Below are positions 7,141 to 64,000 of a stretch of 64,000 nt of DNA, one piece after another. Numbering within the stretch: position 1 is the stretch's first letter; each line of letters begins with the position of its first letter. Origin of the DNA: Hemiscyllium ocellatum (lineage: Eukaryota); the NCBI RefSeq assembly GCF_020745735.1, contig NC_083407.1:84311857-84375856 (forward strand), given 5' to 3'. The notes beneath the pieces were generated by a model. That model saw nothing but the letters and a program-made list of their open reading frames with translations. It had not been told where the DNA came from and did no database searches. The translations under genes were made by a program, and so were the position numbers.

Positions 7141-7840
7141 ACTAGCCAATCTAGAAGGATCATTCAGCTTGGACGTACACACTGAATCAGTGCGTGGCAT
7201 CCAACAGAATTAACTTGCAAAGTTCTCTTCAACTTTTCAAATATTATTTTGAAGATGTGGCATTCCCGGCCAGACCAAAATGTATAATCTTCTTGAATTA
7301 CTCCCAAGAAAGTGAATGACAGCCATATTCTTGAACCGTCACAGTTAATGCGATAGCTAAGTGCACCTGCAGTCCTGTTTGAGAAGTGGTTCCAGAATTT
7401 TGACTTAGCGAACGATAACAGAGGAGATGCAACACAGCTCCAAGTCTGAATTGTGTGCAACTTGGAGGACAGCTTACAGATTGTGAAATTCTCAGGCAAC
7501 AACATTCAAGCTCATCACCATTCAGGTGAAATTAGTAAACTTAATCAGTAATTCATGCACCACATTAAATATTAGCCTTCTTCACTATCAACTTGAATGC
7601 ATTACATACCATTTCCAGGATTTTAAGGCTTCTTCCACAGTTCAAAGTATCATAACCTCTACCTCTTAGAAAGAGGATGGCAGCCAAAACATAGTAACCT
7701 ATCACTATCCATGTTTCCTCTCCACCCACTATCCTGATTTGAACCTATTTCACCATTCTTTCTTCAGCTGCATGTTGATGTCCTGAGACTTTCCAGAAAA
7801 CAGCAATATGGATACAACTTCACCAGGCAAACTTAATAGT

Positions 7841-8905
7841 CGAGTGTGTGGTGCTGGAAAAAAAAACAGCAGGTCAGGCAGCATCTGAGGAGCAGGTGAA
7901 TCGACATTTCGGGTAAAAGCCCTTCCTCAGGAATGAGGCAGAGTACCGAGGAGGCGGAGACATAAACAGGAGGGGGGTGGGGCTGTGGAGAAGATAGTTG
8001 AGAGTGCGATAGATAGATGAAGGTGGAGTAATGGTGATAGGTGGGAAGGAAGATGGACAGGTAGGACAGGTCATGAGGGTGGTGCCAAGTTGGAAGGTTG
8101 GATCTGGGATAAGTTGGGAGCTGGGGAAATGAGGGAACTGGTGAAATCCACATAGATCCCGTGTGGTTGGAGGGTCCCTAGGCATTGGTTGGTTAGGGAG
8201 TGGCGATTGAGGTGGCCTAGGATCTGCATATCCATGGCGATGTGGGAGGCGGAGTTGAAGTGTTTGGCTACAGGAAGGTGGGGTTGGTTGGTGCATGCAT
8301 CCCAGAGATGTTCTCTGAAGCGCCCTGCAAGTAGGCATCCTGTCTCCCCAAGGTAGAGGAGACCACATCGGGAGCAATGGATACAGTAAATGATGTGTAT
8401 GGAAGTGCAGGAAAAACTCTGGTGGGCATGGAAGGCTCCTTTGAGGCCTTGGACGGAGGGGAGGAGGGGGGATGTGTGGGTGCAGGTTTTGCAATTCCTG
8501 CGGTAGCAGGTGAAGGTGGCGGGAAGGGAGAGTGAGTTGGTGGGGAGCATGGACCTGACAAAGGAGTCGTGGAGGGAATGGTCTTTACAGAAATCAGATA
8601 GGGTGGGGAGGGAAATATCTTTCTGGTGGTGGGATCCATTCGTAGGTGGCGGAAATGACAGAGGATGATGTGATGTAGATGGAGGTTGGTGGAATGGAAG
8701 GTGAGGACTATGTGGGTTCTGTCCTTGTTGCGATTGGAGGGGTTGGACTCAAGGGCAGAGGTGCGGGAAACGTATGAGATGCACTGGAGGGCATCCTCAA
8801 CTACGTGGGAGGAGAAATTGCAGTCTTTAATGAAGGAGACCATCATATATGTTCTGTGGTGGAACTGGTCCTCCTGGGAGCAGATGTGGCAGAGAAATTG
8901 GGAAT
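7841..8905 (-). mobile_element. Penelope-like element, 5'-truncated (RT thumb + GIY-YIG endonuclease + 3' region with hammerhead motif)
   Basis: Minus-strand ORFs give ICSQEDQFHHR, CRRNCKTC and IIYCIHCSRCGLLYLGETG..RFREH; homologous to 35132-37181. Confidence 0.9.
7899..7934 (-). ncRNA. Minimal hammerhead ribozyme motif in PLE 3' region
   Basis: Minus strand ATTC-CTGAGGA-AGGGCTTTTACCC-GAAA-T-GTC-GATT: CUGANGA and GAAA boxes intact, GUC cleavage triplet; stems II and III carry substitutions. Confidence 0.7.
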
Positions 8906-20550: not shown

Positions 20551-23500
20551 GGGTGGATCCAAGATGGCAGCAATCCAACAGGTTTGTATTGCTGAGCTCT
20601 ACATCATAACTCAGGCGAAGTGGTGCTTTTACCCTCCCCGTCTAGCTATTTTGGAGAAAAATAGATAGTTTAATATCAGTAGAATTGCTACACATCTTTT
20701 TTTAGCAAGGAAAGATGACTAAAGGCAAAGGACCAAACAAATTGCAACAGACGGGACACTCCCCTGCAGCATCAGATATGCCCACGGCCGCAGCTACTGC
20801 CTCCCCCAAAATCCTGGTGGAGTCACCTGCTCAAGAGGCCTGGCTGGAGAGTTCGTGAAACTCCAGGAGAAGATCACAGCATCGATTGAAGAGAATCGCA
20901 CCATGCTGCAAAAGGATAAGCAGCAGCTACCGAGTCTCAGGAAGCAAGTGGAGGAGGTTGACCGGTAGACCGCGACGTCAGAGACCGCAGTTGAGTCCTC
21001 GATGGGACGTATCCAGGCTCTGCAGGTACAGGCCTTAGGAGAACAGGTCAATGACCTGGAGGTTCGAAGCCAAAGAAAAAACATCCATGTGGTCGGCCTG
21101 ATGGAGTGAGTGTAAGGTGAGCAGCCAGCCAGTTTTTCGAAGAATGGCAGCTGTGATTTCTGGGCTGTGAGGCAGAGGCAGACCAGGTGTGAATTGAAAG
21201 AGTTCATCAGGTGGTGGTGTGCAGGCCCAGTATGGACCGGCGCCCCCTCCCAGTCCTAGTGTGATTCCAGTCCGATAGGGACAAACAAAAGGCAATGGAA
21301 GGCGCCAGGTTGCTGGGAAAGGATCCACAGGCCATGATTTATGAAGGATTAAAGATTATATTTTCCAAGACTTCTCTACAGCCATGATCCTTTGATGAGG
21401 TGAAGAGGAGACTGAGGGATCTGGATATTCAATATTCTATCAGGTGTCCGACAATGCTCCGTTTTAACCACAAAGGGTCCATGCATGCATTTGACTCCTC
21501 AGAAAAAGCAAATTACTTTCTGGACACTATGAAATTGACCGGATGGTCCAAAGAACATGGACAATAATGGTTCTCTTTCCTTTTCCTTATTTTTCCCCCT
21601 CTACCTCATGTATCTCTTTCTTTATTATTTTGTTTCAGAAAGCATTGTTGATTTTTTCTTCCTGGTAATAATGGAGGTCAGTGTGGGGTTGGGGAAGGGT
21701 GAAGTGCCCACTTTTGATTTCTTTGTCCATAATACCTTTCTTTTGATCCTTCGGAGGAGTGTGGGACACACTCAAGCTAGGAGGAGTTATGGGGGTGTAT
21801 GTGAGTAGTGTTAAGCGACCCTGTAGGCAGGGTGGGTCTCCAATCAAGTGTTTTTTGTATGTTGTAATTGCTTTAGTTTGTTGGTTTTTAGTCAAGGGCA
21901 TTTTTGAAAGTTTTATTAACGTAGTTTTAGTGTGTGTTTATTTTAAGACTCCATGAATCTCCATTGTTTACACGTGGCACATTGTGAGTAGGGTTCTTCC
22001 TCTCAGGGGTTCAAGGACTGTTATAGAGGGATATGGCTAAGTGTCTGCTTTAATGGTGCACCTGGAATATTAAGGGATGTCACTTGTCAGTCAAGAGGGA
22101 AAAAAAAAGTACTTACAAGTCTCAGGAAGGAGATGGTTGATATGGCCCTTTTGCAAGAAACTCATCTTGATGATAGGGAGCACTTAAAAAGGTACAGAAG
22201 GATGGGTTTGATTGTGTGTTTTTTTGTCGTTTAATACTAAGAGCAGGGGAGTGGCCATACTTGCCCAGAAGAGCCTCCCATTTAAGTTCTTAGAGCAACT
22301 TAATGGTGAACAGGGGCAGTTTTTAATCCTTAAAGCTTTAATACATGGTGAAGAGTATGGCATCCTAAATCTTTACTGTACCGTGGCACACCCCCTCAAA
22401 TTGCTGATTGATGCACTAAGTGAATTGCCCTTGGAACGTGGACCCCACACACAATGCTCAAAAGGTCCCCCAAATATCTCTCCGCAATCCAAGTGACTGG
22501 TTGACTTATACATAGAATTGGGGCTGGCGGAAATGTCTCCACTCTATGGGTAGGAACTTCACCTTTTTCACTGATCCATACAAGTGTCATACCAGGATTG
22601 ACCTTTTTTTAAAGCTCCCACTGTCTTTCTGGAGTCAGTGGTGTTCTGTAAAATTGAAAACAGAGCCATTTCCTACCATGCGGCAGTGTATTTGGAGGTT
22701 GACATTAAGGGCAATGGAAGAAGTTTGTGGCATTGGCAAATGGATCCTTTTATTTTTAAGGACAGTAAATTTGTCGAGTACTTCGAGTGAGTTTAAAGTG
22801 TTCTTGGCTATCAATTCGAACACAGCTAGTAACCCGTTTGTACTCTGGGAGACTGCTAAGGCCTATGCTAGGGGGATAGTTATCGTTTATTCGGCCAGCT
22901 GGAAGCAACAGAAGGGAGGGCAGCAATGTCTGCTCGACGCATGGTTAAAGGCAGCTGAGACAGCATATTTTGAGAGGCCTGTGACTAAATTGCAGCGGGT
23001 CACGGCTCTCCAGGTCACTTTGAACTCTAAACTCACTCAGACAGCAAAGAGAAAACACTTGCATGAATCAATGACTGTTTGAGCATGACAGTAGGCTAGA
23101 CAAATTCTTGGCATATCTGGCCAGTAAAAAAAAAACACCCTCCAATCCATTACATCACTCAGAGAAGGCAATGGGATTCGTACATGTGACTTTAAAAAGA
23201 TCAATGTGGCATTTTGGAGTTTTTACTCTGAACTATATCAGTCAGAATGCTGCGAGGATAGTTGGGCTAAGATGGAGTCTCTTTTTTTAAAAAAAGAACC
23301 TGGACCTTCCAGGCGTGACTTCGGAACAGGCATCTCTTCTTAATGGCCCCTTGACAGTGCAAGAGATACAGGAGACAGTAAGCCAGCTCCAAGTGGGAAG
23401 GTGCCCGGCCCTAATGCTCTCCCAAGTGAGTTCTACAAAGAATTTATAAATATCCTGTCATGGCCATTCCAGACATGTACAACTATTCGTACAGTCATGA

Positions 23501-25363
23501 GTGCATCACGCCATCCCTGACAGGGGTTAAGATCTCTTATTCTCAAGAAAAGGAAGACCCCAGATGATTGTGCTTCATAAAAGTCCATCTCATTGTTAAA
23601 TTTGAACTTTAACATTTTATCCAAGACACTTGCGTTGAGATTGGAGAAGGTGTTGCCCTATACTGTTAAGGAGGACCAGGTGGGTTTTATAAAGGGCCAT
23701 AGGTCCTCCAATAATATTAGAATATTACTGAATATGGTCCAAGTGTCAGCAATGATCGGTTCAGGGTTTGCTGACCTCTTTAAATGCAGAGAAAGCATTC
23801 GATCAGGTGATGTGGCCATGTCTTTCTTATACTCTGGAAAAGTTTGGTCTAGGTTAGGTCTTTGTCAGATGGATGGAGGTCCTGTATAGTGACCCGCTGG
23901 CTGTGTTTCTCATCAATACTGTAAGATCTAGTAATTTCAGTACTGGTAGGGGCAGTTGGCAAGGTTGCCCCCCTCACCACTACTGTTCATGCTGGTGATT
24001 GAGCCGCTAGCAGAAGCTATCCATAAGGATCCTAACATACTACTCTGTTGTTTATGGATAAAGTGAGTACAGTTATGGAATACTGTCGAAATTCAATCAT
24101 TATTAATAGGGTCAAAGCAGGGAGAACAATGCGACAGAGCAAGAGCAGTTTATCTAAAACCTCCTTTCTTACCCAGATAGTTGGTACGCCAGGATTCCAG
24201 CCAGGAATGATGCACCATGGATTCAAAACGTGGGCAACTAGGGGAGTCTCCTGTTTGGCAGACATCATGATGAACTTCGACGAAATGAACCACAAATATG
24301 GATTGCCTAGCAGGGATCTTTTTCATTATGTATAAATTCCCTCACCTGAAAATAAAGACTTCACTTTTGACCAACCGCTATTGGTGTATTACAGAGAAGC
24401 GAGCCCTTCATGCTGTAAGCAATCTGTCAGTTAGTACGCACTACCACCTTCTGGGGTGCTGTGCCTCGAATGATATTGAACGATTGAGAGAGGTCTGAGA
24501 GCAAGAGTTGGGAGTAGAGATCCCCTCAGAGACATGGGAGGACATTTGTTTAAACACAAGATAGATCTCACTCTGTAACAGAACACACCATGTAGTTCAA
24601 GGCTCTTCATGGGATTCATTTGGCCCCAGACCATTTTGCGAAATTCAAAAAGGGAGCATCTCCAATGTGCCCCAAGTGCAAAATAAGCATTGGTAGCCTC
24701 ACTCATTGTTTGTGGTCACGCCACAGCCTTCATAGGTACCACAGCGCTGCGGCAGTAGTAATAGAGGGGGCCCTGGGGATCAAAGTTAAGGTAGACCCGA
24801 TCTCTCTTCTCTTGGGCTTGCTGGATTTATCTTCCTTAGACATACATGGGAAAAAGCTATTTAACCTCGTCACTTACTGTGCGAGGAAGAACATTTTGAT
24901 GAGCTGGGTGTCTGAACACCCTCCAGGCCTGTTGGGGTGGCTTAGGATAATTATGGAACACATCCCTTTGGATTTCCTCATAAACATAGTGGATCAGAAA
25001 ACAGAACATTTTTGTAAGAGACAGCAGCCCTTTATGAATTATCTGGAAGCAGATTTGTTGCCATTTTACTTAGGGCATTTGTTTAGCTATGATGGTTAGG
25101 TTTAGTGAGTCTTGTGCCTGGGAGGAAGAATCTCAAATAAATATGGGTGTAATAATTAATGCTCCCCAAGGTTGGGAGCTTTGGTGTAGCTGCACTGAGT
25201 GGTGTTATTTGTTTATAGATTTGTAGTGAGTGTACTTTTGATTTGTTTTAAGAGTAGGGTAGTAGTTGGTTCATTGTAATTGTTATTACAATTTTAAATT
25301 GTTATATTTTTGTAATGTTCTAATTTTGTAAAGAAAAAGTTTCTCAGTAAAAAGATTAAAAAA
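20551..25363 (+). mobile_element. L1-clade LINE, 5'-intact, degenerate, RT C-half deleted
   Basis: GGGTGGATCCAAGATGGC start; ORF1; ORF2 from ~22033 (WCTWNIKG, SRGVAIL, LALRLEKVLP..DQVGFIKG, QGCP, IEPLA); jump at ~24040; CPKC..HCLW knuckle; T-rich 3' UTR and A-tail. Confidence 0.9.
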
Positions 25364-26282
25364 GCAATTTTATCACTAACAAAAACAGGTTCAACTGATC
25401 AGCTACCGAATTATGGTTCAAAATCAACAATAATGTGACATAAGACAAAATAAATTACGTAAAGGTCACCTTATTCTACCTTTGTGATCTGGACTTTTGA
25501 TCAACAGAATTTTTCCTTTTATTGGCTATGTCTCCTACCTCTGATATATCTGCAAAACTCTGTCTGTCTTACCTGCCCTACTTATGAATCAACGTGTGCA
25601 TTTGGATTTAAAGGGCTTTTACTTTAAGTTTGCATATTAGTCCCTAACAAACTGTTTTGCCTTTGCAAACAGATACATTTTTTAATAAAAATAACTTTGT
25701 TTGTTTGTTGATGAAATCTGGTGTGAGCTTCATGTCAGATAGCAAACAAAGTAACCTTGGTGATGGAATGGTCTTTTACACATTTGAGACAACTTGTCGA
25801 TTCATGGAGCTTGATATCCAATACACTTTAGAACGAAATTCCAAGGACTAATGGACCCACTGAGAACAAACCCATCTTCTTCTTGCTGTTGTTCCAGATT
25901 CCAACACAAGAGGAATCATCTGTTCAACATCTATGGTCAAGCGGTGAGAATCCTTTATTTGCTTTTGAGTTGATGCAGATTAATCTGGGGGAGGGGGTTT
26001 TCACTCTGGCAGGATTTGCTGCTGTTGTGGACATCTGTGAAGCAGGGAGTGCTTGACCAGTTAATTGTTGACCTGTTAATGGGTGTCTCAAGGGCCTCAA
26101 TTTATCTATGAGTGAGAAGACAGATCTTAACCTTCCCAACCCCTGACCTAATTGACAGGGAATCAGATAGGCAAGAAGCTGACTCCTCCAGGGTGACCAG
26201 ACAACCTGGATTTTCCAAGAACATAGAACAATACAGCACAGAACAGGCCCTTCAGCCCACAATGTTGTGCCGAACATCTATC

Positions 26283-29185
26283 CTAGATTAAGCACCCATC
26301 CATGTACCTATCCAATTGCCGCTTAAAGGTCGCCAATGATTCTGACTCTACCACTCCCACAGGCAGCGCATTCCATGCCCCAACCACTCTCTGGGTAAAG
26401 AACCCACCCCTGACATCTCCCCTATACCTTCCACCCTTCACCTTAAATTTATGTCCCCTTGTAATACTCTGTTGTACCCGGGGAAAAAGTTTCTGACTGT
26501 CTACTCTATCTATTCCTCTGATCATCTTATAAACCTCTATAAAGTCACCCCTCATCCTTCGCCGTTCCAACGAGAAAAGGCCGAGAACTCTCAACCTATC
26601 CTCGTACGACCTATTCTCCATTCCAGGCAACATCCTGGTAAATCTTCTATGCACCCTCTCCAAAGCTTCCACATCTTTCCTAAAGTGAGGCGACCAGAAC
26701 TGCACACAGTACTCCAAATGTGGCCTAACCAAAGTCCTGTACAGCTGCAACATCACTTCACGACTCTTGAATTCAATCCCTCTGCTAACGAACGCTAATA
26801 CACCATAGGCCTTCTTACGAGCTCTATCCACCTGAGTGGCAACTTTCAAAGATCTATGTACATAGACCCCAAGATCCCTCTGTTCCTCCACCTGACTAAG
26901 AACCCTACCGTTAACCCTGTATTCCGCATTCTTATTTGTTCTTCCAAAATGGACAACCTCACATTGGCAGGGTTGAACTCCATCTGCCACTCCTCAGCCC
27001 AGCTCTGCATCATATCTAAGTCCCTTTGCAAACGACAACAGCCCTCCTCACTGTCCACAACTCCAGCAATCTTCGTATCATCTGCAAATTTACTGACCCA
27101 CCCTTCAACTCCCTCATCCAAGTCATTAATAAAAATTACAAACAGCAGAGGACCCAGAACTGATCCCTGCAGAACTCCACTTGTAACTGGGCTCCAGGCT
27201 GAATATTTACCATCTATCACCACTCTGACTTCGACCGGTTAGCCAGTTTTCAATCCAATTGGCCAAGTTTCCCTCTATCCCATGCCTCCTGACTTTCCGC
27301 ATAAGCCTACCATGAGGAACCTTATCAAATGCTTTACTAAAATCCATGTACACTACATCCACTGCTCTACCCTCATCCACATGCTTGGTCACCTCCTCAA
27401 AGAATTCAATAAGACTTGTAAGGCAAGACCTACCCTTCACAAATCCGTGCTGGCTGCCCCTAATCAAGCAGTGTCTTTCCAGATACTCATAAATCCTATC
27501 CCTCAGCACCCTTTCCATTACTTTGCCTACCACAGAAGTAAGACTAACTGGCCTGTAATTCCCGGGGTTATCCCTATTCCCTTTTTTGAACAGGGGCACA
27601 ACATTCGCTACACTCCAGTCCCCTGGTACCACCCCCGTTGACAATGAAGACGAAAAGATCATTGCCAACGGTACTGCAATTTCCTCTCTTGCTTCCCACA
27701 TAATCCTAGGATATATCTCGTCAGGCCCGGGGGACTTGTCTATCCTCAAGTTGTTCAAAATGTCCAACACATCTTCCTTCCTAACAAGTATCTCTTCTAG
27801 CTTACCAGTCCGTTTCACACTCTCCTCTTCAACAATACAGTCCCTCTCGTTCGTAAATACTGAAGAAAAGTACTTGTTCAAGACCTCTCCTATCTCTTCC
27901 GACTCAATACACAATCTCCCACTACTGTCCTTGATCAGACCTCCCCTCGTTCTTGTCATTCTCATGTTTCTCACATACGCATAAAATGCCTTGGGGTTAT
28001 CCTTGATCCTGTCCGCCAAGGATTTTTCATGCCCTCTCTTAGCTCTCCTAATCCCTTTCTTCAGGTCCCTTCTGGCTATCCTGTATCCCTCCACTGCTCT
28101 GTCTGAACCCTGTTTCCTCAACCTTATGTAAGCCTCCTTCTTCCTCTTTACTAGACATTCAACCTCCCTCGTCAACCAAGGCTCCCTCACGACCATTTCT
28201 TTCCTGCCTGATAGGTACATACATATCAAGGACACGTCGTATCTGCTCCTTGAAAAAGTTCCACATTTCCACCACATCCTTCCCTGACAGCCTATGCACC
28301 CAACTTACGCTCCTCAAATCCTGTCTTACAGCATCATAATTTCCCTTCCCCCAATTGTAAAATCTACTCTGTTGTGCGCACCTATCTCTCTCCATAACCA
28401 AGGTGAAAGTCACAGAATTGTGGTCACCATCACCAAAATGTTCACCCACTAACAAGCCCATCACTTGTCCTGGTTCATTACCGAGTACCAAGTCCAATAT
28501 GGCCTCCCCTCTGGTTGGACAATCTACATACTGAGTTAGAAAAGCTTCCTGGACACACTGCACAAACACCGCCCCATCCAATCTACTTGATCTAAAGAGC
28601 TTCCAATCAATATTTGGGAAGTTGAAGTCGCCCATGACTACGATCCTGTGGCTTCTGCACCTTTCCAAAATCTGTTTCCCAATCTGTTTCTCCACATCTC
28701 TGCTGCTATTGGGGGGCCTATAGTAAACACCCAACAAGGTGACTGCACCTTTCCTATTTCCGACTTCAGCCCATACTACCTCCAAAGGCAGATCCCCCTC
28801 AAACTTCCTTTCTGCAGCCGTTATACCATTTCTAATTAGCAATGCCACCCCCCCCTCCTTTTTTACCACCCTCCCTAATCTTACTGAAACATCTGTAACC
28901 AGGAACCTCCAACAACCATTCCTGTCCTTCATCTATCCACGTTTCCGTGATGGCCACAACATCGTAGTCCCAGGTACCGATCCATGCCTTAAGTTCACCC
29001 ACCTTATTTCTGATACTCCTTGCGTTGAAGTATACGCACTTGAGCCCATCTCTGTGTCCGCAAGTATTCCCTGTCAGTGCTACCTTCTCCACAGCCTCCC
29101 TACATTCTTGGGCATCCTGACACACAGCTAGCTTACTTGCTGGACTACAAGTCCGGATCCCATCCCCCTGCCAAACTAGTTTAAA
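26283..29185 (-). pseudogene. CR1 ORF2: APE endonuclease + reverse transcriptase, four frameshifts
   Basis: YFNARSIRNK, AITETW, GDFNFP, GDHN, KSPGPD, YRPVSLTS, MDFSKAFD, QGSVLGP, FADD; frame changes at ~28855, ~28190, ~27225, ~26965. Confidence 0.9.
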
Positions 29186-30106
29186 CCCCCCCCGAAGAGT
29201 GCTAGCAAACCTACCCCCCAGGATATTGGTGCCCTTCTGGTTCAGGTGCAACCCGTCCTGTTTGTACAGGTCCCACCTTCCCCAGAATGCAGTCCAATTG
29301 TCCAAATACCTGAAGCCCTCCCTCCTACACCATCCTTGCAGCCACGTGTTCAACTGCACTCTCTCCCTATTCCTTGCCTCATTGTCACGTGGCACCGGCA
29401 ACAACCCAGAGATGACGACTCTGTCTGTTCTAGCTTTTAGCTTCCAGCCTAACTCCCTGAGCTCTTGAATGACCTCCCCACCCCTCTTCCTACCTATGTC
29501 GTTGGTGCCAATGTGTACCACGACTTCTGGCTGCACATCCTCCCCCTTAAGGATTCTGAACACACGGTCCGAGACGTCTCGGACCCTAGCACCCGGGAGG
29601 CAACAAACCATCCGAGAGTCTCGCCCATGTCCACAGAACCGCCTGTCCGTCCCTCTAACTAGAGAGTCTCCTATAACTAGCGCTCTCCTGCTCTCCCCCT
29701 TTCCCTTCTTAGTCTCAGAGCCAGACCTCACGCCACAGACCCCTTCACTGCAGCTTACACCTGCAAGGCTATCCCCCCCAACAGTTTCCAAAGCTGTATA
29801 CTTATTGTTTAGGGGAACGACCACAGGGGAACCCTGCACTGCCTGCTTCTTCCCCTTCCCACCTCTAACTGTTACCCAGCTACCTCTGTTCTCCGGGGTA
29901 ACTATGTCCCTGTAGCTTCTATCAATCACCCTCTCAGCCTCTCGAATAATTCTCAGTTCATCCAACTCCAGTTCCAGTTCCCTAACTCGTTCGGTGAGGA
30001 GCAGGATCTGATTGCATTTCCTGCAGACAAAGTTGGCAGGAGTATCGGTGGTCACCCCTACCTCAAACATCCTGCAGGAGGAACATTCCACTGCCTGCGC
30101 TGCCAC
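29176..30106 (-). CDS. CR1 ORF1: zinc finger/leucine zipper + SGNH(GDSL) esterase
   Basis: CSSC..CRKC, coiled coil ERVRELELELDELR, VIGDSLVR, CLPGAR, VVVHIGTNDI, DGLHLN. Start codon uncertain (GTG at 30106). Confidence 0.85.
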
Positions 30107-30295
30107 GACTGTACACTTTGTCTCCAAAACAAGAACACTGAGTCAATAACACTGAGTCGCTTACCTGTGGACTTTAAAGTTAGGTTAGAGGAGGAGGGTG
30201 GGAGGGAGGCCCTAGGAAGTAGGGCCTGGAGTCTAGAACACACCTACTCAAATACTACTCACTTACCTTCCCGACCAGCTCTGCGCTCCGACCTC

Positions 30296-30451
30296 ACTTC
30301 CGCCCGGCTCGCACCGCTCTCCGCGGTGAAAAGACCGTTGTCGTCGAGGTAAGTTCTTTAAATAGGTAAGGTAAGTGAGTAGTATTTAAAGAACTTACCT
30401 CGACGACAACGGTCTTTTCACCGCGGAGAGCGGCGCGAGCCGGGCGGAAGT
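30296..30451. repeat. Near-perfect inverted repeat, 69-bp arms, 18-bp spacer
   Basis: 30296-30364 vs 30383-30451: 68 of 69 positions complementary. Confidence 0.97.
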
Positions 30452-32939
30452 AGAAGACTTCTCAGACTTCGCATTCTGCATCCCATGTGTGGCTTTTCAG
30501 ATGACATGTAGGTCTGGGATAGTGGCAGCATGATTTGGCTATAACATCGCTGAAGGATTAGAGAATGGTATTTTTGAGAAACGCTTACCTCCGTTGGCAA
30601 GAGTGCGATTCCATGGGGATCGGTTCGCAGGCTTCATTCTACACATGCACGAATGTCCCCACCAGTCTGCAGTCTCCAACTCTCTCTCCCCCACTGCCCA
30701 CGTCCCCGCTCAACCAAAGGATTCATCAGCATCTCCCTTGACCTGAACCAATTTATTACCTAATGCCAATCCCCTGCCTTTTCTTCAAATCCCTTAATGT
30801 AATTTCTATTCAAGTAATCATCAAAGTACTCTTGAATACCTCAAATGAATCTGCTTCCAACACGTTTCCTGGTAGTGCATTCCATAATCCAACTAATTAT
30901 TCTTACATCACCCTTGCTTAATTTGCACATCACTTTAGACTTATGCCCTTTCGTTCTTTTTTCTTTTATGGACAGAAACAACTTGTATCCTTGTGACAAT
31001 TGTGCCCCCTACATTGTCTTTCAAGATTCTTCCAACCAAAGTGCACCATCTCACTCAACTGCCATCTATCCATCCATTCAACTTCTTAACGTCCTTTTGT
31101 AAAAAGAAAAATGAAGGGTCCCATTACAAACTTCAGGGGAGTCCCATGACAAACCTTTCTCCAGCCGAAAATAAATTTCTACAATGGCAATGTTACCTTT
31201 TTAATACTTTTGTAACTCCACACTTTATCTTAATATCTGCAAGTACTGTGCTTCATCAACTTATAATAGAAACAAGCTATTGCTGTTTTCTGCTGTTCCT
31301 AGTCACCACTGACATGAAATTTTTAAGAGTACATTTGGCTCAAAAAAGTGCAGTTGTCTGCAGATAAAGATGAATTGATAAAAATCCAGTCACAAAATTG
31401 ATTGCACGTGCAGAGTTTGAACTTAAATTGTTGGAATTTATAAAATATGATTTACAAACTTGTGATCAGATCTCATACTATATTTCCTCACTATATAAAT
31501 TTCTCATTGCACCAGAATATAATCACTATTCTTTATAATTGTTATCTCTTAATTGTTTAAACATGAAAAGATTACAAATTTAATTTAAATATGTATCTGC
31601 TGTAATTTAAAGCTCCTAAACAGCATTTCATCAACATGCACACCACTGAAAATGATAAATGTCCAGAAATTCTCGATAGAATTTTAATATCTAGACTAGT
31701 TTGTAGTGAGTGTGCTGAGCAGTAACCAGAAACCCATCTGCTGATGGACGGTCCAAATCCAAATAGTTGAGAGGATTCTGATGTGGGGCTGAATGCAAAC
31801 AAACTACAAGGTGGTAACTGAGAGACAACTGGACTGATGCAGTCTCAAGGACAGAAGTCAGTCTCCTGTGTTCTCTGAAACATCTGACACAGTGGCTTAT
31901 AAGGCTTGCAGATAACATTGATCCAGCAGACCACAGAAAATCCTGGCTCTGAAACCAAATCAACATGGCTGTGGTGCTGAGCTGTGAGTGGTTAGTTACA
32001 TTGGATACCATGTCAAATAAGTTAAGTAACTTTTTCAAGACAGGAAAGGTGACCAGAAAACCACATTAAGTACTCACTGAGTTCTTCAGTCTCCTACTGC
32101 ACGTCACTTCTCAGACCAAACAAGTATCATTCCTCTCTCAAGGCAGCTCGAATATCCCATCACGTCAGCCACCTTCAACAGTCATCTTCAACTTAATACT
32201 ACCTCATATCTCACAATAATCATCAAATGCTTGCATTGCATTGTTTTAACACATTCCATTTCTGACAGTTAAATCTTTACCTCCTTACAGAATAAGAGTG
32301 CAAAAAACTAGGGTAGAGAATAGAGTTACAGAGCAAAAAGAGGTCATTCAGCCTAAGGCCTGCACCAGCTCTTCAAACAACCATTACCTAGTTCCAATTG
32401 CCAGCCTTTTCCCCAAATCCTTGCACACTATTTCTATCTAGCAAGAACATGGGATAGCTCTACAAATGAGACTGATGTTTTGAAATCGAAATGATGCCAA
32501 AAAGGCACAGTACTGACTACACACAGCATTCCCAACAATGCAGAAGATCTAAAAGCACAAATAAAGATAGAAACGTTTGAAATTCTAACAGGACTAGACA
32601 AAGTAAGCACAGCATGTTCCCAAAGACCAGAAAGTCCAGAAACAGGAGTCATTGTTTAAACATATAAAGTGTATATTTAAGACTAAGATGAGGATAAATT
32701 TAGTCATGCAGTGTGACACAAAGTGGTTGAGGCCAAAACGTCTCATGTTTACAAAGAGGAGGTAGATAAAGTTTTAGAGTTAATCAATCAAAGGATATGG
32801 AGTGAAAGAGGAAACATCGTAGTGTTAGATGATTAGCCATGATCATACTGAACAGCCTTGAAGGACCAAATGGCATACTCCTGTTCTTAGTTTTCATCTT
32901 TCCATGATACAATTAACATTACCGAAATATGGCCACACA

Positions 32940-34600: not shown

Positions 34601-35115
34601 GTGGGAAAAGATTTGCTAACCCACGATTGGTCAATCTTGCTTTTGTTGGCCTAACTGTACCAGAACACGCAGAATTCCCAAGCAACTCAAGCCGAATCAG
34701 ACAGCACGCAGACAAGGGAATACACTAAGCTCCCACAGACAATGACAGAGCACCACAGATATCTCAAAGCCCCAAGGGCAGTTTCATAACCCAGCAATAC
34801 CAAAGCCACACAAAGAGTAGGTCAGACAGAGAGGCACCAGGACATGCTCCAGGCACAGGACAATGGAAGCACCTCACCACTTCAGAAAAAGACATTAACA
34901 CCTACTGTGAAAAGGAATGGAACCGCTGGTACTGTTAGGATGCTGCATTGTGTGAAGGAACAGGACATTCATCTGATATTTGTTTTCCAATTAGCATCCT
35001 TGTAACTAGATTTCTCCATTTCCCATTTCTTAATTAATGTCATTGTGCAACATTACTATAAAACTGTTCTCATCCTCAGCTCTAGAAGGAGAAATCTGAT
35101 CTATTTGTATAGACT

Positions 35116-37181
35116 CTGGATTAGTGGTGCTACTGCCCCCTCGACCATGACCCCACCACCCCCATCACCAAACCATCATCTCCCAGACCATGCAGAACTT
35201 CATCACCTCAGGAGATCTCCACCCACAGCTTCCAACCTCATTGTCCGGGAACCCCGCACTGCCCGGTTCTACCTCCTTCCCAAAATCCACAAGCCTGACC
35301 ACCATGGCCGACCCATTGCCTCAGCATGCTCCTGCCCCACTGAACTCATCTCGACCTACCTCGGCACTGTCCTATCTCCCCTAGTCCAGAAACTCCCCAC
35401 ATATGTTCAACACACCACCCACGCCCTCCACCTCCTCCAAGACTTCAGTTTCCCCAGCTCCCAACGCCTCATCTTCACCATGGATATACAATCCCTCTAC
35501 ACCTCCATCCACCATGACCAGGGCCTCCAAGCCCTCCGTTTTTTCCTCTCCAGACATCCTCAACAGTACCCTTCCACCGACACTCTCATTCGTTTGGCCG
35601 ATTTGGTCCTCATCCTTAACAATTTCTCCTTTGAATCCTCCCACTCCTTGCAGACCAAAAGGGTAGCCATGGGCACATGTATGGGCCCCAGCTATGCCTG
35701 TCTCCTTGTTGGCTACGTAGAACAGTTGATCTTCCGTAATTACACTGGCTCCACTCCCCACCTCTGCCTCCGCTACATTGATGACTGCATTGGCGCCACC
35801 TCGTGCTCCCGCGAGGAGGTTGAGCAATTCATCAACTTCACCAACACATTCCACCCTGACCTTAAATTTACCTGGACTATCTCTGACCACGTCCCTCCCC
35901 TTCCTGGACCTCTCCATCTCCATTAATGACGACCAACTTGACACTGACATTTTTTACAAACCCACCGACTCCCACAGCTGCCTAGATTACACCTCTTCCC
36001 ACCCTACCTCTTGCAAAAATGCCATCCCGTATTCCCAATTCCTCCACCTCCTCCGGATCTGCTCCCAGGAAGACCAGTTCCACCACAGACCACACCAGAT
36101 GGCCTCCTTCTTTAGAAACCGCAATTTCCCTTCCCACGTGGTTAAAGATGCCCTCCAATGCATCTCGTCCACATCCTGCACCTCCGCCCTCAGATCCCAC
36201 ACCTCCAACCGTAACAAGGACAGAACGCCCTGGTGCTCACCTTCCACCCTACAAACCTTTGCATTAACCAAATCATCTGCCGACATTTCCGCCACCTCCA
36301 AAAAGACCCTACTACCAGGGATATATTTCCCTCTCCACCCCTTACCGCCTTCCGCAAAGACCGCTCCCTCCGTCAGGTCCACGCCCCCGAGAACCCACCC
36401 TCCCGTGCTGGCACTTTCCCCTGCCACCGCAGAAACTGTAAAACCTGCGCCCACACCTCCTCCCTCACCTCTATCCAAGGCCCTAAAGGAGCCTTCCACA
36501 TTCATCAATGTTTTACCTGCACATCCACTAATATCATTTATTGTATCCGTTGCTCCCGATGCATTCTCCTCTACATTGGGGAGACTGGGCTCCTCCTAGC
36601 AGAGCGCTTTAGGGAACATCTCCGGGACACCCGCACCAATCAACCACACCGCCCCGTGGCCCAACATTTCAACTCCCCCTACCACTCTGCCGAGGACATG
36701 GAGGTCCTGGGCCTCCTTCACTGCTGCTCCCTCACCACCAGACGCCTGGAGGAAGAACGCCTCATCTTCCACCTCGGAACACTTCAACCCCAGGGCATCA
36801 ATGTGGACTTCAACAGCTTCCTCATTTCTCCTTCCCCCACCTCACCCTAGTTCCAAACTTCCAGCTCAGCACTGTCCCCATGTCTTGTCCTGACTTGTCC
36901 TACCTGCCTATCTCCTTTTCCACCTATCCACTCCACCCTCTCCTCCCTGACCTATCACCTTCATCCCCTCCCCCACTCACCCATTGTACTCTATGCTACT
37001 TTCTCCCCACCATCCTCTAGCTTATCTCTCCACGCTTCAGGCTCACTGCCTTTATTCCTGATGAAGGGCTTTTGCCCAAAACATCGATTTCACTGCTCCT
37101 TGGATGCTGCTTGAACTGCTGTGCTTTTCCAACACCACTAATCCAGAATCTGGTTTCCAGCACCTGCAGTCATTGTTTTAC
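35116..37181 (+). mobile_element. Penelope-like element: RT + GIY-YIG, with short inverted end at 5' junction and TSD
   Basis: FYLLPKIHK, FTMDIQSLYTSI, AMGTCMGPSYA, RYIDD, IIYCIRCSRCILLYIGETG..RFREH; imperfect TSD ctatttgtatagact (35101-35115) / ctacttatacagact (37182-37196). Confidence 0.93.
37054..37089 (+). ncRNA. Minimal hammerhead ribozyme motif (CpG-decayed)
   Basis: ATTC-CTGATGA-AGGGCTTTTGCCC-AAAA-CATC-GATT; two CpG transitions away from GAAA-CGTC. Confidence 0.7.
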
Positions 37182-38789
37182 CTACTTATACAGACTGTCA
37201 GTTCTGTGTCAGCTGGCCTGTTTTCTCTTCCAGTGATATCACTTGCACTAAACCGTTTGTCAACTTCACTTCGAGCTGTGTTTTGTGATCTCTAATCTAT
37301 TGGGCAAATTTCTCCAATAGCAGTTTATAATGAATGTTTTGAAGATGGGGATCAAATATAACATTACTAAATTTGCAGGCAGTATGGTCCTCTCAGGATG
37401 GTGAAGGGAGATATTGGGCAATAAAAGTGTGCATTCTAAACAGTTTCAAAGAACAAGTGGAGATTTTATTGAAACTCATGAAATATTTGAAGGGGTGAGC
37501 CTAATTGTAGGCAGAAGATTTCCCCAGTTAAGGAGTCTAGAACCGGGGGGACACAATCTAAAAATAAGGGGGAATGCCACTTCGGTCTGAGATGAAGAGG
37601 AGTTATTTTACTCAAAAGGATTGTGAACCTTTGGAGTTCTTTACCATAGATGGCTATGGATGCTGAGTCTTTGAGATAAAGATTGTTTAAGATAAGATTG
37701 CCAGATTTCCGATTACCAGTGGCGTACGTGGTTATGGGGAAGTGGTGAGTAAAAGGCACTAAAATGTCTGATCAGCCATACCATCTTGAATGGTGGGGAA
37801 GGCTCTGTGGGCTAAGTGGCTCTGATTCATATGTCCCATTGCTTTGTGGCTGTCTCAATAGGTTAACCTGAAGCAAGGGTGCCAAATGATCGGTTCTGAA
37901 GTCTGCCAGATAGCAAGCCAGTTTTTTTTGTGGTTGTAGAGATTAAGGGGTCCAGATTGTTTTGAGAAATGAGGTGTAATTCTTTTCCCCCTAGAAATCA
38001 TGACAACAGTTATGTGCTAATAGTGTACAGACAAACTATCCAGAGTCCCAGGAGAGTTACAGATGTCAGCTTGTAAAGAACTATACCTTAAAATGCCCAT
38101 TATGTTCCCATTGGGCTGTCAAGAATAGCTAAATTAGCAACTTGACAAGAATACAAAGTCCATATGATTCACATTGTAATGATGATGGGCTTTGAGATGG
38201 GAAGGATACAATGGAAGCCATTTTAAAGCCTGATTTACAAGCTTTCCTAAAATATACCAAGTATAGGTAAGTTAGTCAACCAGGGTCCAAAAGAGAGAGA
38301 GCAGCTGAAGATTCAAAATATTTATGGTTCATCATGCCTGTATGTGCCAATTTGAGCTCATGCTCAAATTGAAAAGACCAAATACATAAGAATCTGAATT
38401 AAAACCAAGAAATTCAACTAGCTTTTGCTGGTGGATCTCCACCAAAATGCTCACTATGAAGGTCAGTTCCAGGGTTGAAGATTACCAGGTTGAGTAAAGA
38501 AAATAAAGTCAACCTCCAGGAGTCAAGAATCATTTTTGACAGTTCTGGAAGAACTGAATGTCTATTTAAGTATTATATAATGCATATGTGAAGTTTTTTT
38601 CAGTTTTGTTAAAACTGATGTTCTATGGTTCATTTAGTCTTTGTTATAGTAGACATCTTAAAACAATGAAATCTTTGTGTGTCACCCATTCAGCTATTAA
38701 ATGGAAATCTGAAACTTTTTGGTCTTTACAGAGATTATAGCATCTTCAAATCATGGGCACCATATAACAAAAAAAATAATACATACAGC

Positions 38790-54689: not shown

Positions 54690-55212
54690 TTGCAGAGTTC
54701 AGAACCAGGGGCACTGGCTTAAGGTGAGATTTAAGATTTAAAAGGGATGTGAGGGGCAACTGTTTCACTATGTTAACGGAATGAATTGCCAGAGGGAGTG
54801 GTGGAGTAGACAAGCAGGAAGTTAGAAGAACACAACAAGCCAGGCAGCATTGGGAGGTGGAGAAGCTGATGTTTCAGATGTAACCCTTCAGGAATCATTC
54901 CTGAAGGAGAGTTACACCAAATCATCAACTTCTCCACCTCCTGATGCTGCCTGGCTTGCTGTGTTCTTCCAGCCTCCTGCTTGTCTACTTTGGATTCCAG
55001 CATCTGCAGTTTTTTGGCTCTAACAGAGGGAGCGGTAGTGGTAAGTACAGTTACAACATTATTAAGACATTTAGACAGGTACATGAATAAGAAAGCTTTA
55101 TATAATTATGGGCGAACACAGGCTTCCCAAATGACAGGCATTTGGGAAGCATGGTCAACATGGATGAGTTATATCAAATGGTCTGTTGCCATGCTGTATG
55201 ACTCTATGACCC
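54690..55212 (+). mobile_element. CR1 3' fragment hosting a palindromic PLE-derived insertion
   Basis: agaaccagggggca...atgactctatgac tail; interrupted at 54805-55023. Confidence 0.75.
54805..55023. mobile_element. Palindromic PLE-end mini-element (two ~92 bp arms + 34 nt tail), 15-bp TSD
   Basis: Arms 54805-54895 / 54897-54989, centred on cttcaggaatcattcctgaag; TSD cagagggagtggtgg (54790-54804) / cagagggagcggtag (55024-55038). Confidence 0.85.
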
Positions 55213-56754: not shown

Positions 56755-57324
56755 TGTTATGGACCAGGCCAGATCCCCTCAAAACATTTCAATAAGATAG
56801 CCCAGACCCTACCTTCCTAGTTGTTTTAAGGTGGATATTCCAGGAGTGATTCAGCTGGCCAAACCTCTCCCTCCACTCGATTTTAAACAAAACAATTTAT
56901 TTACTAACTACTGAATGAAACATGAATGAGAATTCGGAATAACCTAACCTATCTGAAAACCCAACTGACTCGATTGCAACTTAATGACGCTGTTCCAATT
57001 TCCTACAACATCCCCATAAACACACAAGAGAGATGTCAGAGAATCAGCATGGAACCTGTTTTCACTGTAGCTGTTTCTTTGGGTGCACAGCTAAAAACTA
57101 AACCAACCTAGAAAAATCCCTGAAGTGGGGGAACTGGCCACATCCCTTTCATTGTACAAATGTTTTTAAAAGAAATCTAAAAGCCTTTTTCCCTGATTAT
57201 GGCTAACTGATACAGCCTGAGGCAACAATCGAAGTGGCCCAATCAAATTGAAACCTCTGCCTTTTACAACCCCCTTTGAAACAAAAAGACAACATAACCT
57301 TGTTAAAGGAGGAGCATTGTCACA
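56755..57324. mobile_element. Probable solo LTR (570 bp)
   Basis: TGTTA...TCACA termini, flanks tttg/attg (3 of 4 match), AATAAA on the minus strand at ~56896-56901. Confidence 0.5.
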
Positions 57325-57404
57325 ATTGCAAACGCTACATCCTTGCTCCAAACAAAAAAGGATAAACCTGGCAATTACAAGTCAAGTTAGCCTCAGTGAT
57401 AGGA

Positions 57405-57704
57405 GGTTAAAAATCACAACATCAGGTTATAGTCCAACAGGTATAATTGGAAGCACACTAGCTTTTGGAGCGACGCTCCTTCATCAGGTAATCACCTGGC
57501 GAAGGAGCGCCGCTCTGAAAGCTAGTGTGCTTTCAAGATGCTGCCTGAAGATGCTGCTCTTCCAGCACCACTTATCCAGAATCTGGTTTCAAGCATCTGC
57601 AGTCATTGTTTTTACCTTGCTTCCAATTAAACCCGTTGGACTATAACCTGGTATTGTATGATTTTTAATTTTGTACACCCCAGTCTAACACCAGCATCTC
57701 CAAA
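57405..57704. mobile_element. Palindromic double-hammerhead mini-element with nested 81-bp PLE end; 12-bp TSD
   Basis: Inverted arms centred at 57491/57492; TSD tcagtgatagga (57393-57404) / tcagcgatagga (57705-57716); nested insert 57537-57617 with TSD tgctttcaa/tgcttccaa. Confidence 0.88.
57456..57527. ncRNA. Two head-to-head minimal hammerhead ribozyme motifs
   Basis: Minus: TAC-CTGATGA-AGGAGCGTCGCTCC-AAAA-GCTA-GTG. Plus: CAC-CTGGCGA-AGGAGCGCCGCTCT-GAAA-GCTA-GTG. Their consensus is a complete CUGAUGA/stem II/GAAA core with palindromic AGCU stem III. Confidence 0.8.
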
Positions 57705-57985
57705 TCAGCGATAGGAAGCTTTTAGAAAAAAAAGTGCTCCCAATTCAGGAATAACGACCTGGAGCTACCTGCACATATGCAGTTCTACATGACGCACAAA
57801 CGACTTCCGTGAAATCAACTGAATTTTGATTGCATTATGAATTGCAAAGCTTCACACAGCAGATCGTCATACAGACACATCCAACCAAATTCAATGAGAT
57901 TTTACAAATTCACACTGTTTAGCAAAGCTTGGAAAATTCACCCATCTGCTTTATCTATAGCTCTATCAAAAGCACTGTAAAGACA

Positions 57986-58198
57986 TAGCTAGTTCTGCCA
58001 TAACGAGTTTCATTAAGGCGAATTCACTATAACACAATTGATGAATGGGGGACACTTCCTAAAGTGCAAACTTTTTAAAAAGTGTGTTAGCTGTAATGTG
58101 ATTACATTAGAAACAGGGCTTAGTGTTGGCAAAGCGCCAATTTTCTATAATGCAGGGTTGAATAAGAATGCAACCATTGTGTTACAGAAGAACTACTC
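57986..58198. mobile_element. Degenerate MITE related to 42680-42906
   Basis: agttctgccataac...caattgatgaat...ttttctataat...gttacagaagaact shared with the first copy. Confidence 0.6.
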
Positions 58199-63969: not shown

Positions 63970-64000
63970 GTATACAAAGTTAAAAATCACCAGGTTATAG
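63970..64000. repeat. Start of another copy of the 57405-type element (cut by the window edge)
   Basis: gttaaaaatcac..caggttatag matches 57406-57432. Confidence 0.6.

What the first reader, a model, noticed from the sequence alone, without database searches (positions are those of the whole stretch)
57393..57716. Palindromic mini-element built from two head-to-head hammerhead ribozymes
Seen: a ~220-bp non-coding element (excluding the nested insert) with a 12-bp TSD. Its two arms are inverted copies, each carrying a minimal hammerhead core (consensus CAC-CUGAUGA-AGGAGCGUCGCUCC-GAAA-GCUA-GUG). Each arm has lost a different core base, so together they reconstruct an intact ancestor. Known: PLEs carry minimal type I hammerheads with a palindromic stem III that cleave as dimers. 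Inference: this layout puts a ribozyme on both strands, and the full hairpin masks both cores in a read-through transcript. That could make intronic insertions harmless to the host pre-mRNA and may define a non-autonomous PLE-mobilised class. Another copy starts at 63970.
Basis: partly seen in the sequence, partly recalled or inferred. Interest (0 to 1): 0.8.

Follow-up and report, generated by a model that had tools for sequence, protein, structure and literature searches.

The report
Decayed fold-back Penelope retroelement insertion
This is an old, mutated insertion of the tail end of a very abundant Penelope-like retrotransposon family, laid down as two inverted copies that each carry a dead mini hammerhead ribozyme; this form is already described for these elements, so it is ordinary.

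Summary
At 57393-57716, a 12-bp target-site duplication (11/12) flanks two inverted arms. Each arm carries a minimal hammerhead motif with a different core defect. An 81-bp insert is nested in the right arm.

The reading as a new palindromic element class is not supported. Contigs from three organism labels show about 10^5 copies of this family. The majority letters restore CUGAUGA and GAAA. Most copies run straight past this palindrome's centre, and other fold-backs join at other points.

The arms are unequal at their outer ends. Only the right arm has a 36-39-nt "tail", and the left arm stops where the family's second class of 3' ends lies. Two other insertions in this window (54790-55036 and 35101-37196, the latter with RT and weak GIY-YIG remnants) follow the same rule.

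This matches the published Penelope-like element (PLE) pattern: 5'-truncated copy, adjacent inverted 5'-truncated copy and a one-sided 30-40-bp tail. In vitro work links it to two RT start sites and priming on both DNA strands.

One point stays open: 24-34 contigs per DNA run share this same centre, at the ribozyme's 5' edge. The scan has noted this architecture many times elsewhere in this genome.

The parts
57393..57404 (.). left copy of the target-site duplication (TCAGTGATAGGA)
   Evidence: family D3: 11/12 identical to 57705-57716. It lies exactly at the element's border. The left flank joined to the arm is also seen in contigs of three organism labels (records 1, 17, 25).
57405..57489 (-). 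inverted, tail-less arm: the 3'-terminal part of the family in antisense orientation. The minimal hammerhead remnant lies at 57456-57489 (G12 changed to A by a C>T change at a CpG, 57466).
   Evidence: arm alignment. table 3: 57466 T>C is the majority letter. table 7: a family 3' end class lies at the equivalent place, 57668.
57490..57493 (.). centre of the palindrome (AATC). It can also be read as the first bases of the right arm, because the family continues ..AACCACCUG upstream of the ribozyme.
   Evidence: pair I1 (4 nt between the arms); loose ends at 57489 show the family's continuation; table 3 covers 57490-57493.
57494..57536 (+). inner part of the direct arm, with the minimal hammerhead remnant at 57493-57527 (CUGGCGA instead of CUGAUGA; 11.1 is U)
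   Evidence: table 3: 57499 G>A and 57500 C>T are the majority letters.
57537..57617 (+). nested later insertion: a 5'-truncated, ribozyme-less 3' end (with tail) of a second Penelope-type family, with a 9-bp TSD at 57528-57536 / 57618-57626
   Evidence: 87% identity to 37103-37183; alignment A2; the 37-kb copy follows RT and weak GIY-YIG ORF remnants.
57618..57668 (+). outer part of the direct arm, the counterpart of 57406-57455
   Evidence: pair I2.
57669..57704 (+). one-sided 'tail' of about 36-39 nt, present only on the direct arm. The family's match runs on to 57707, so up to 3 nt overlap the TSD.
   Evidence: the right arm overhangs the left arm. table 7: two end classes at 57668 (238-298 contigs per DNA run) and 57707 (734-1,064 per DNA run).
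57705..57716 (.). right copy of the target-site duplication (TCAGCGATAGGA)
   Evidence: family D3. record 32 joins the tail, the TSD and the right flank in organism C.
63970..64000 (-). outer end of a second copy of the same family, cut off by the end of the window
   Evidence: sequence; 76-81% over 27-38 nt, E 0.02-0.2; alignment A1.

Best explanation
This is the product of one old retrotransposition event by a Penelope-like element (PLE) reverse transcriptase/GIY-YIG endonuclease. It is a 'fold-back' insertion made of two extremely 5'-truncated copies of the last 85-125 nt of a hugely abundant PLE-derived family. The copies are joined head to head and flanked by one 12-bp target-site duplication.

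Shown here:
- one TSD around both arms;
- both arms come from the same sub-type of template;
- the direct arm ends at the family's outer 3' end (with tail) and the inverted arm at the family's inner 3' end (without tail);
- the same asymmetry occurs in two other PLE insertions of this window;
- the minimal hammerhead sits about 85 nt from the 3' end and is intact in the family majority.

Inferred mechanism:
- The endonuclease made a staggered cut.
- Both DNA strands primed reverse transcription of family RNA, one at each of the two internal RT start sites that purified PLE protein uses in vitro.
- The two short cDNAs met and were joined near the 5' edge of the ribozyme.
- I give this about 55% within this explanation. 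A turn-back or template jump of a single RT gets about 35%.

Later history:
- A second PLE family inserted into the right arm.
- Point mutations, 13 of 14 of them transitions, destroyed both ribozyme cores.

The palindrome is a by-product of integration. It is not a functional design, and this copy does nothing today beyond forming a long hairpin if it is transcribed.
For: - Anatomy: one 11/12 TSD at the borders and inverted arms of 86-90%.
- Same template type: both arms share a GU insertion after the cut site and the AAUU minor variant (table 3 at 57446 and 57627, and loose ends at 57456 and 57618).
- Family level: 23,000-32,000 contigs were laid per DNA run. Summed depth on the arms is 2-5 million against about 20-60 on the flanks, which is roughly 10^5 copies.
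- Core restored: majority letters restore GAAA and CUGAUGA.
- Two 3' end classes at 57668 and 57707, with AT-rich flanks behind them.
- Most copies continue past 57489 as GGTTGTGGAG, and fold-back joints occur at other positions.
- Age: the insertion junctions are present in three organism labels (records 1, 17, 25, 32).
- Same rule in this window: 54790-55036 has a 13-bp TSD, 70-nt arms and a 34-nt one-sided tail. 35101-37196 has a short inverted tail-less piece and a 2-kb copy. The latter holds RVT_1 (E 3e-8) and a weak GIY-YIG match (E 1e-3).
- Literature: PMC8557442 describes PLE insertions as highly 5'-truncated, often with an adjacent inverted 5'-truncated copy and a 30-40-bp tail at one end. 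PMC11167929 reports that purified PLE protein cleaves and extends both strands and starts RT at two internal sites whose spacing is the tail. PMC4209133 reports minimal hammerheads in PLE repeats, dual motifs on opposite strands 100-700 bp apart, an extra base between positions 9 and 10.1, a G10.1-C11.1 pair and palindromic 15.2-16.2.
Against: - No RT/GIY-YIG ORF was linked to this particular family. Its PLE nature rests on architecture and on the ribozyme type.
- In this element and in 54790-55036, the inner ends of the two arms agree within 0-4 nt. They lie 3-7 nt upstream of the CUGAUGA box. Two independently truncated cDNAs do not predict that.
- 24-34 contigs per DNA run cross the centre at 80-90% identity, mostly reading CAGGTGATCACCTG (table 3; records 18, 27, 28). 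The same centre therefore recurs in paralogues.
- Head-to-head joining of two cDNAs has not been shown experimentally for any PLE.
- The contig data are summaries. I could not read the individual copies.
Confidence: 0.8

Rival explanations
1. Same single PLE event, but the inverted arm was copied from the first cDNA instead of from a second RNA. The RT reached the 5' end of its template (or a block just past the ribozyme) and turned back, or jumped, onto nascent cDNA. This gave a near-symmetrical palindrome. The endonuclease then resolved the structure about 36-39 nt short of the end. This is a variant nested inside the best explanation.
For: The inner ends of the arms are symmetrical within 0-4 nt here and within about 1 nt at 54790-55036. 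Paralogues with the same centre read as a loop-free palindrome, CAGGTGATCACCTG. Both arms share rare template variants. PMC8557442 attributes the tail to EN-mediated resolution.
Against: The copy at 35101-37196 is strongly asymmetrical, with an inverted piece of about 20-25 nt against a 2-kb direct arm. Many joints are also asymmetrical (57489|57659, 57671, 57687). The inverted arm's outer end coincides with an RT start-site class, which the two-start-site model explains directly.
Confidence: 0.3
2. One reading: the palindrome is itself a propagating, non-autonomous, PLE-mobilised element family with a fixed centre. On this view the head-to-head ribozymes and the masking hairpin are its design.
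For: 24-34 contigs per DNA run (6 in the RNA-guess run) cross the centre without the flanks of this locus. Most keep A-T-C at 57491-57493 (table 3; records 18, 27, 28). At single-copy depth this equals tens to a few hundred copies.
Against: Those copies are about 0.1% of the family's depth. 238-307 contigs per DNA run pass 57489 into a different shared sequence, and other centres exist. The central letters can be read as templated family sequence (AACCACC, with T a common variant of C), so a shared centre does not require common descent. A transcript of the unit folds into a hairpin of -144 kcal/mol, which is a poor RT template. The tail-less outer end is explained by integration, not by transcription of a unit. 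Other notes of this scan describe centres at stem II and at the cut site (unchecked).
Confidence: 0.08
3. Two independent insertions of the same family in opposite orientation, one next to or into the other.
For: The family is abundant, about one copy per 40 kb, and PLEs are reported to insert into or beside earlier copies (PMC6765202).
Against: A single TSD flanks the pair, and there is no TSD around either arm alone. The arms share rare variants and nearly the same inner end. The same tail-less/tailed pairing recurs in three insertions of this window.
Confidence: 0.03
4. A miniature inverted-repeat DNA transposon (MITE or Foldback-like) that merely resembles a PLE end.
For: The element is palindromic, short, non-coding and TSD-flanked.
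Against: The outer ends are unequal by 36-39 nt, so there are no matching terminal inverted repeats at the borders. At least 99% of family copies are not palindromic and behave as 5'-truncated retrocopies with discrete 3' ends. The nested copy and neighbouring copies of the sister family are plain 5'-truncated ends attached to an RT/GIY-YIG element.
Confidence: 0.02

Closest known systems
Complex tandem/inverted insertions of endonuclease-positive Penelope-like elements (Evgen'ev & Arkhipova 2005; Craig et al. 2021, PMC8557442)
   Same: High 5' truncation, an inverted 5'-truncated copy directly adjacent, a 30-40-bp tail at one end only, a TSD and a hammerhead in the terminal repeat. All are seen here.
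   Different: Here both copies are truncated to about 85-125 nt, so nothing but the two ends is left. No ORF of this family was found in the window.
Two internal RT start sites and cleavage/extension of both strands by the Anolis Poseidon PLE protein (PMC11167929)
   Same: The spacing of the two 3' end classes (57668 and 57707, about 39 nt) equals the 'tail'. The ribozyme lies about 85-125 nt upstream of the ends. The flanks of family copies are AT-rich.
   Different: That work did not report head-to-head joined products. The link to fold-backs is my inference.
Minimal (helix III-less) type I hammerheads of PLEs (Cervera & de la Pena 2014, PMC4209133; Lunse et al. 2017, cited in PMC6765202)
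   Same: In the family majority: CUGAUGA and GAAA boxes, an extra A between 9 and 10.1, a G10.1-C11.1 pair, palindromic AGCU in place of helix III and a short helix I. Dual motifs on opposite strands 100-700 bp apart were already noted in Schistosoma.
   Different: Both motifs of this copy are mutated in invariant core positions. Helix II is 5 bp with a 3-nt loop, shorter than the 6-8 bp typical there.
Non-LTR retrozymes / non-autonomous PLE derivatives (Cervera & de la Pena 2020, PMC7229834; Li et al. 2026 preprint, 10.64898/2026.07.22.740005)
   Same: Short, non-coding, hammerhead-bearing sequences related to PLE terminal repeats and presumably moved by PLE enzymes.
   Different: Retrozymes are direct tandem repeats that yield circular RNAs by double self-cleavage. 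Here the two motifs are inverted, so one transcript has only one sense ribozyme.

Membership tests
PLE minimal hammerhead (min-HHR, PMC4209133) | Catalytic boxes CUGANGA and GAAA | tested here: not met
   In this copy the left arm has AAAA and the right arm has CUGGCGA. The family majority has both boxes intact (table 3: 57466 C, 57499 A, 57500 T), so this copy is a decayed member.
PLE minimal hammerhead (min-HHR, PMC4209133) | One unpaired base between positions 9 and 10.1, and a G10.1-C11.1 pair closing helix II | tested here: met
   Both arms read ..GA-A-GGAGC...GCUC(C/U). The left arm has G-C and the right arm has G-U.
PLE minimal hammerhead (min-HHR, PMC4209133) | No real helix III: palindromic 15.2-16.2, so that two copies pair in trans | tested here: met
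   GAAA-GCU-A gives A15.1 G15.2 C16.2 U16.1 = AGCU, which is self-complementary with no loop (feature).
PLE minimal hammerhead (min-HHR, PMC4209133) | Self-cleavage (as a dimer) | not testable with these tools
G12 and A6 are invariant core positions by established hammerhead mutagenesis, so both motifs here are expected to be dead.
Rfam hammerhead families (RF00163, RF00008 and others) | Score at or above the gathering threshold of a hammerhead covariance model | tested here: not met
   No hammerhead hit at gathering score in the window, nor at E<=10 in 57300-57800. The models also miss the core-intact minimal motif at 7930-7907, so this negative says little.
EN+ Penelope-like element insertion | 5'-truncated copy with an adjacent inverted 5'-truncated copy inside one TSD | tested here: met
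   description.
EN+ Penelope-like element insertion | 30-40-bp tail at one end only, matching two discrete 3' end classes | tested here: met
   The tail at 57669-57704/7 is on the right only. Family end classes lie at 57668 and 57707. Tails of 31-34 nt occur in the two other insertions.
EN+ Penelope-like element insertion | Family linked to an ORF with PLE-type RT and GIY-YIG endonuclease | tested here: inconclusive
   Met for the sister family: 35045-35926 matches RVT_1 (E 3e-8) and 36233-36850 matches GIY-YIG weakly (E 1e-3, below Pfam's cut-off). No ORF-bearing copy of the finding's own family is in the window. Searches of outside collections found nothing.
Non-LTR retrozyme | Direct tandem repeats, each with a sense hammerhead, giving unit-length circular RNA | tested here: not met
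   The two motifs are inverted, not tandem. No tandem copy lies at this locus.
MITE / Foldback DNA transposon | Matching terminal inverted repeats reaching both borders | tested here: not met
   The right border carries 36-39 nt that have no counterpart on the left.

The most novel reading that the evidence does not exclude
The recurrence of fold-backs whose two arms both begin 3-7 nt upstream of the CUGAUGA box may mark a defined event in PLE integration. Either the template RNA has a fixed 5' end at the ribozyme's helix I, or the RT turns back or jumps there. The recurrence is seen here, at 54790-55036 in another family, and in 24-34 paralogous contigs per DNA run. If real, the hammerhead region, and not random truncation, would set where PLE inverted repeats form, and these mini fold-backs would be a natural record of a still-unknown step of PLE integration.
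Probability: 0.15. Interest if true: 0.5.

Novelty: new member of a known kind. Interest (0 to 1): 0.2.

Why it matters
As it stands, it matters little. It is one decayed copy among roughly 10^5 of a Penelope-derived repeat, in the insertion form already drawn in reviews of these elements. Its value is as a clean, fully bounded example. It shows in a single 324-bp stretch the TSD, the tailed arm, the tail-less arm, the ribozyme and a later nested insertion. Such short fold-backs, taken genome-wide, could be mined to learn how PLEs make their inverted repeats, which the literature still calls undefined. This single copy cannot settle that.

Tried and rejected
- Rfam at gathering score on the whole window and at E<=10 on 57300-57800 gave no hammerhead. 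It gave only miRNA-precursor look-alikes (MIR845_1 and others, far below threshold), which are artefacts of the long hairpin.
- The same Rfam scan misses a core-intact minimal motif at 7930-7907. I therefore dropped Rfam as a test for this ribozyme class.
- Exact-pattern scans for family sequence found nothing: metagenome contigs twice, genome contigs and viral contigs. No individual outside copies could be read, so I could make no alignment or tree of copies.
- The 'opposite strands' joints (57453/57527 and 57456/57620) first looked like other fold-back centres. I rejected them as cross-mapping between the two arms of the reference. Only the same-strand 'skips' joints were used as evidence for other centres.
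- The RNA-guess run X19 holds family contigs but has zero depth on this locus's flanks. I make no claim of expression for this copy.
- Lunse et al. 2017 (PMC5785218) is not held. It is cited only through PMC6765202.
- I considered ADAR or APOBEC-type editing as a reason for the 13:1 transition bias between the arms. I did not pursue it, because n=14, the directions are mixed and several changes are at CpG.

Full report
**1. What is in the sequence**

Reading 57100-58000 and the repeat search confirm the layout.

- TCAGTGATAGGA (57393-57404) and TCAGCGATAGGA (57705-57716) are direct repeats, 11/12 identical, at the two borders.
- Between them lie two inverted arms. 57447-57489 pairs with 57494-57536 (43 nt, 86%), and 57416-57455 pairs with 57618-57657 (40 nt, 90%).
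- The right arm is interrupted by 57537-57617. This stretch has its own 9-bp duplication (TGCTTTCAA / TGCTTCCAA) and matches 37103-37183 at 87%.
- With that insert removed, the arms align with 75 matches, 14 mismatches (13 of them transitions) and one 2-nt indel.
- The right arm overhangs the left by 36-39 nt at its outer end (57669-57704/7). The finding does not mention this asymmetry, and it turns out to be the key feature.
- The copy 'starting at 63970' is a 31-nt stub at the window's edge. It is weakly but consistently similar to the arm's outer end.

**2. The ribozyme motifs**

- Left arm, - strand: AC-CUGAUGA-A-GGAGC-GUC-GCUCC-AAAA-GCUA-GUG.
- Right arm, + strand: CAC-CUGGCGA-A-GGAGC-GCC-GCUCU-GAAA-GCUA-GUG.

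Apart from the boxes, both arms have the traits that Cervera and de la Pena list for PLE minimal hammerheads:

- an extra base between positions 9 and 10.1;
- a G10.1 pair closing helix II;
- a self-complementary AGCU in place of helix III.

Each arm has a different core defect: G12>A on the left, and A6>G with U7>C on the right. Rfam finds no hammerhead here. It also misses the core-intact motif of the sister family at 7930-7907, so that negative is uninformative for this helix III-less class.

**3. Family-level evidence**

I laid Logan contigs of three DNA runs (organism labels A, B, C) and one run guessed to be RNA on 57300-57800 at 80% likeness or more.

- *Abundance.* 23,000-32,000 contigs per DNA run match the arms. 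Summed depth is 2-5 million on the arms against about 20-60 on the flanks, which is roughly 10^5 copies. The nested insert's family is similarly abundant.
- *Intact ancestor.* The majority letters are C at 57466, A at 57499 and T at 57500. The left-arm defect is a C>T change at a CpG.
- *Same template type.* Both arms share minor variants: a GU insertion just after the cut site, and AAUU where most copies have AAAU. Both arms came from the same kind of template.
- *Two 3' end classes.* Contigs stop matching at 57668 (238-298 per DNA run) and at 57707 (734-1,064 per DNA run). AT-rich, non-conserved sequence lies behind both. The left arm's outer end corresponds to the inner class, and the right arm's to the outer class.
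- *The centre is not a family boundary.* At 57489, 238-307 contigs per DNA run continue with a shared sequence (GGTTGTGGAG...) unlike the palindrome.
- *Other fold-back centres.* Same-strand 'skip' joints show antisense-to-sense junctions elsewhere: 57442|57636, 57441|57624, 57461|57631, 57463|57627, 57487|57680 and 57489|57618 to 57687.
- *Same-centre paralogues.* 24-34 contigs per DNA run do cross this centre at 80-90% identity, mostly with G at 57490, giving CAGGTGATCACCTG. Their depth equals tens to a few hundred copies, about 0.1% of the family.
- *Age.* Flank-to-arm junctions of this very insertion occur in all three labels with 0-3 differences (records 1, 17, 25, 32). The insertion is therefore old. 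This fits about 12% divergence between the arms and one change in the TSD.
- *Expression.* The RNA-guess run has family contigs but no depth on the flanks. Nothing can be said about expression of this copy.

**4. The neighbours**

Notes on this same window pointed to 54790-55036 and 35101-37196, and I checked both.

- 54790-55036 has a 13-bp TSD (12/13), 70-nt inverted arms (89%), a degenerate hammerhead on each arm and a 34-nt stretch on the right only.
- 35101-37196 has a short inverted piece (35111-35129, the complement of 37133-37151) joined directly to a 2-kb sense copy. The ORF remnants of that copy match RVT_1 (E 3e-8) and, weakly, GIY-YIG (E 1e-3, below Pfam's cut-off). It ends with a minimal hammerhead and a tail of about 31 nt.
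- Summary of 3' ends in this window: three of three fold-backs pair a tail-less inverted arm with a tailed direct arm. One simple copy (7960-7840, - strand) stops at the tail-less site. The insert nested in the finding has the tail.

**5. Comparison with the literature**

- Craig et al. 2021 (PMC8557442) state that PLE insertions are highly 5'-truncated. [quoted passage not shown]
- The 2024 in vitro study of an Anolis PLE (PMC11167929) shows three things. The protein cleaves and extends both strands. Reverse transcription starts at two internal sites whose spacing is the tail. The ribozyme lies about 90 nt upstream of those sites, and its cleavage is not needed for insertion.
- Cervera and de la Pena 2014 already saw dual minimal hammerheads on opposite strands 100-700 bp apart and ascribed most motifs to truncated PLEs.
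- Non-autonomous, PLE-derived hammerhead elements are also known as non-LTR retrozymes. Those are direct tandems.

**6. Mechanism**

Best reading, with confidence 0.8: one PLE integration event produced both arms.

- Within it, I favour priming on both strands of the staggered cut, one cDNA from each RT start site, with the two short cDNAs joined head to head (about 55%).
- The alternative is a turn-back or template jump of one RT at the end of its template (about 35%). The near-symmetry of the inner ends here and at 54790-55036 favours this. The strongly asymmetrical 35101-37196 copy and many asymmetrical joints speak against it as a general rule.
- The steps after cutting are inference. No experiment has shown head-to-head joining.

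- The centre is not fixed.
- The central letters can be read as templated family sequence.
- The unit's RNA is a hairpin of -144 kcal/mol (z -13).

Functionally, each transcript would contain one sense motif, buried in the hairpin. It would lack the second sense copy that these helix III-less ribozymes need, and both motifs here are mutated.

**7. Verdict**

The PLE and hammerhead identification is right. The 'new class' and the 'harmless in introns' readings are not supported.

The scan has noted this architecture many times in this genome. Those unchecked notes mention other centres. The host is probably a cartilaginous fish, but that rests only on those notes and on my memory of such repeats. 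I did not verify it with a tool.

The one point worth a genome-wide look is whether fold-back centres pile up at the ribozyme's 5' edge.

Noticed in passing
window 54790-55036: A second fold-back PLE-end insertion of another family. It has a 13-bp TSD (CAGAGGGAG[T/C]GGT), 70-nt arms at 89%, degenerate hammerhead remnants on both arms, a 34-nt tail on the right only, and a centre (GGAAT-C-ATTCC) again just upstream of the CUGA box.
   Followed up: partly
window 35101-37196: A 2-kb decayed Penelope-like element with RVT_1 and weak GIY-YIG ORF remnants. It ends in a minimal hammerhead (37048-37090, GAAA decayed to AAAA) plus a tail. It is preceded by a short inverted tail-less piece (35111-35129) and flanked by a likely TSD, TAYTTRTAYAG.
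   Followed up: partly
window 7840-7960 (- strand): The only core-intact minimal hammerhead in the window (CUGAGGA-A-GGGC..ACCC-GAAA at 7930-7907). It sits in a simple copy that stops at the tail-less site. Rfam's hammerhead models do not detect it.
   Followed up: partly
window 57405-57704 (arm against arm): 13 of the 14 differences between the two arms are transitions. All differences in the TSDs of this element and of 35101-37196 are also transitions. The sample is too small to interpret.
   Followed up: no
loose ends at 57406, 57668 and 57707: The averaged flanks of thousands of family copies are strongly AT-rich behind both 3' end classes. This matches the AT-rich target preference reported for a PLE endonuclease in vitro.
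   Followed up: no
window 57538-57557: The nested insert begins with a 10-nt direct duplication (AAGATGCTGC, spacing 13). Its first 17 nt have far lower family depth than the rest, so the 5' junction of that insert is atypical.
   Followed up: no
window 57446-57537: Sub-threshold Rfam matches to plant and animal miRNA precursor models (MIR845_1 31.6 bits against a gathering score of 81, and others) on both strands. They are artefacts of the long perfect-ish hairpin.
   Followed up: yes
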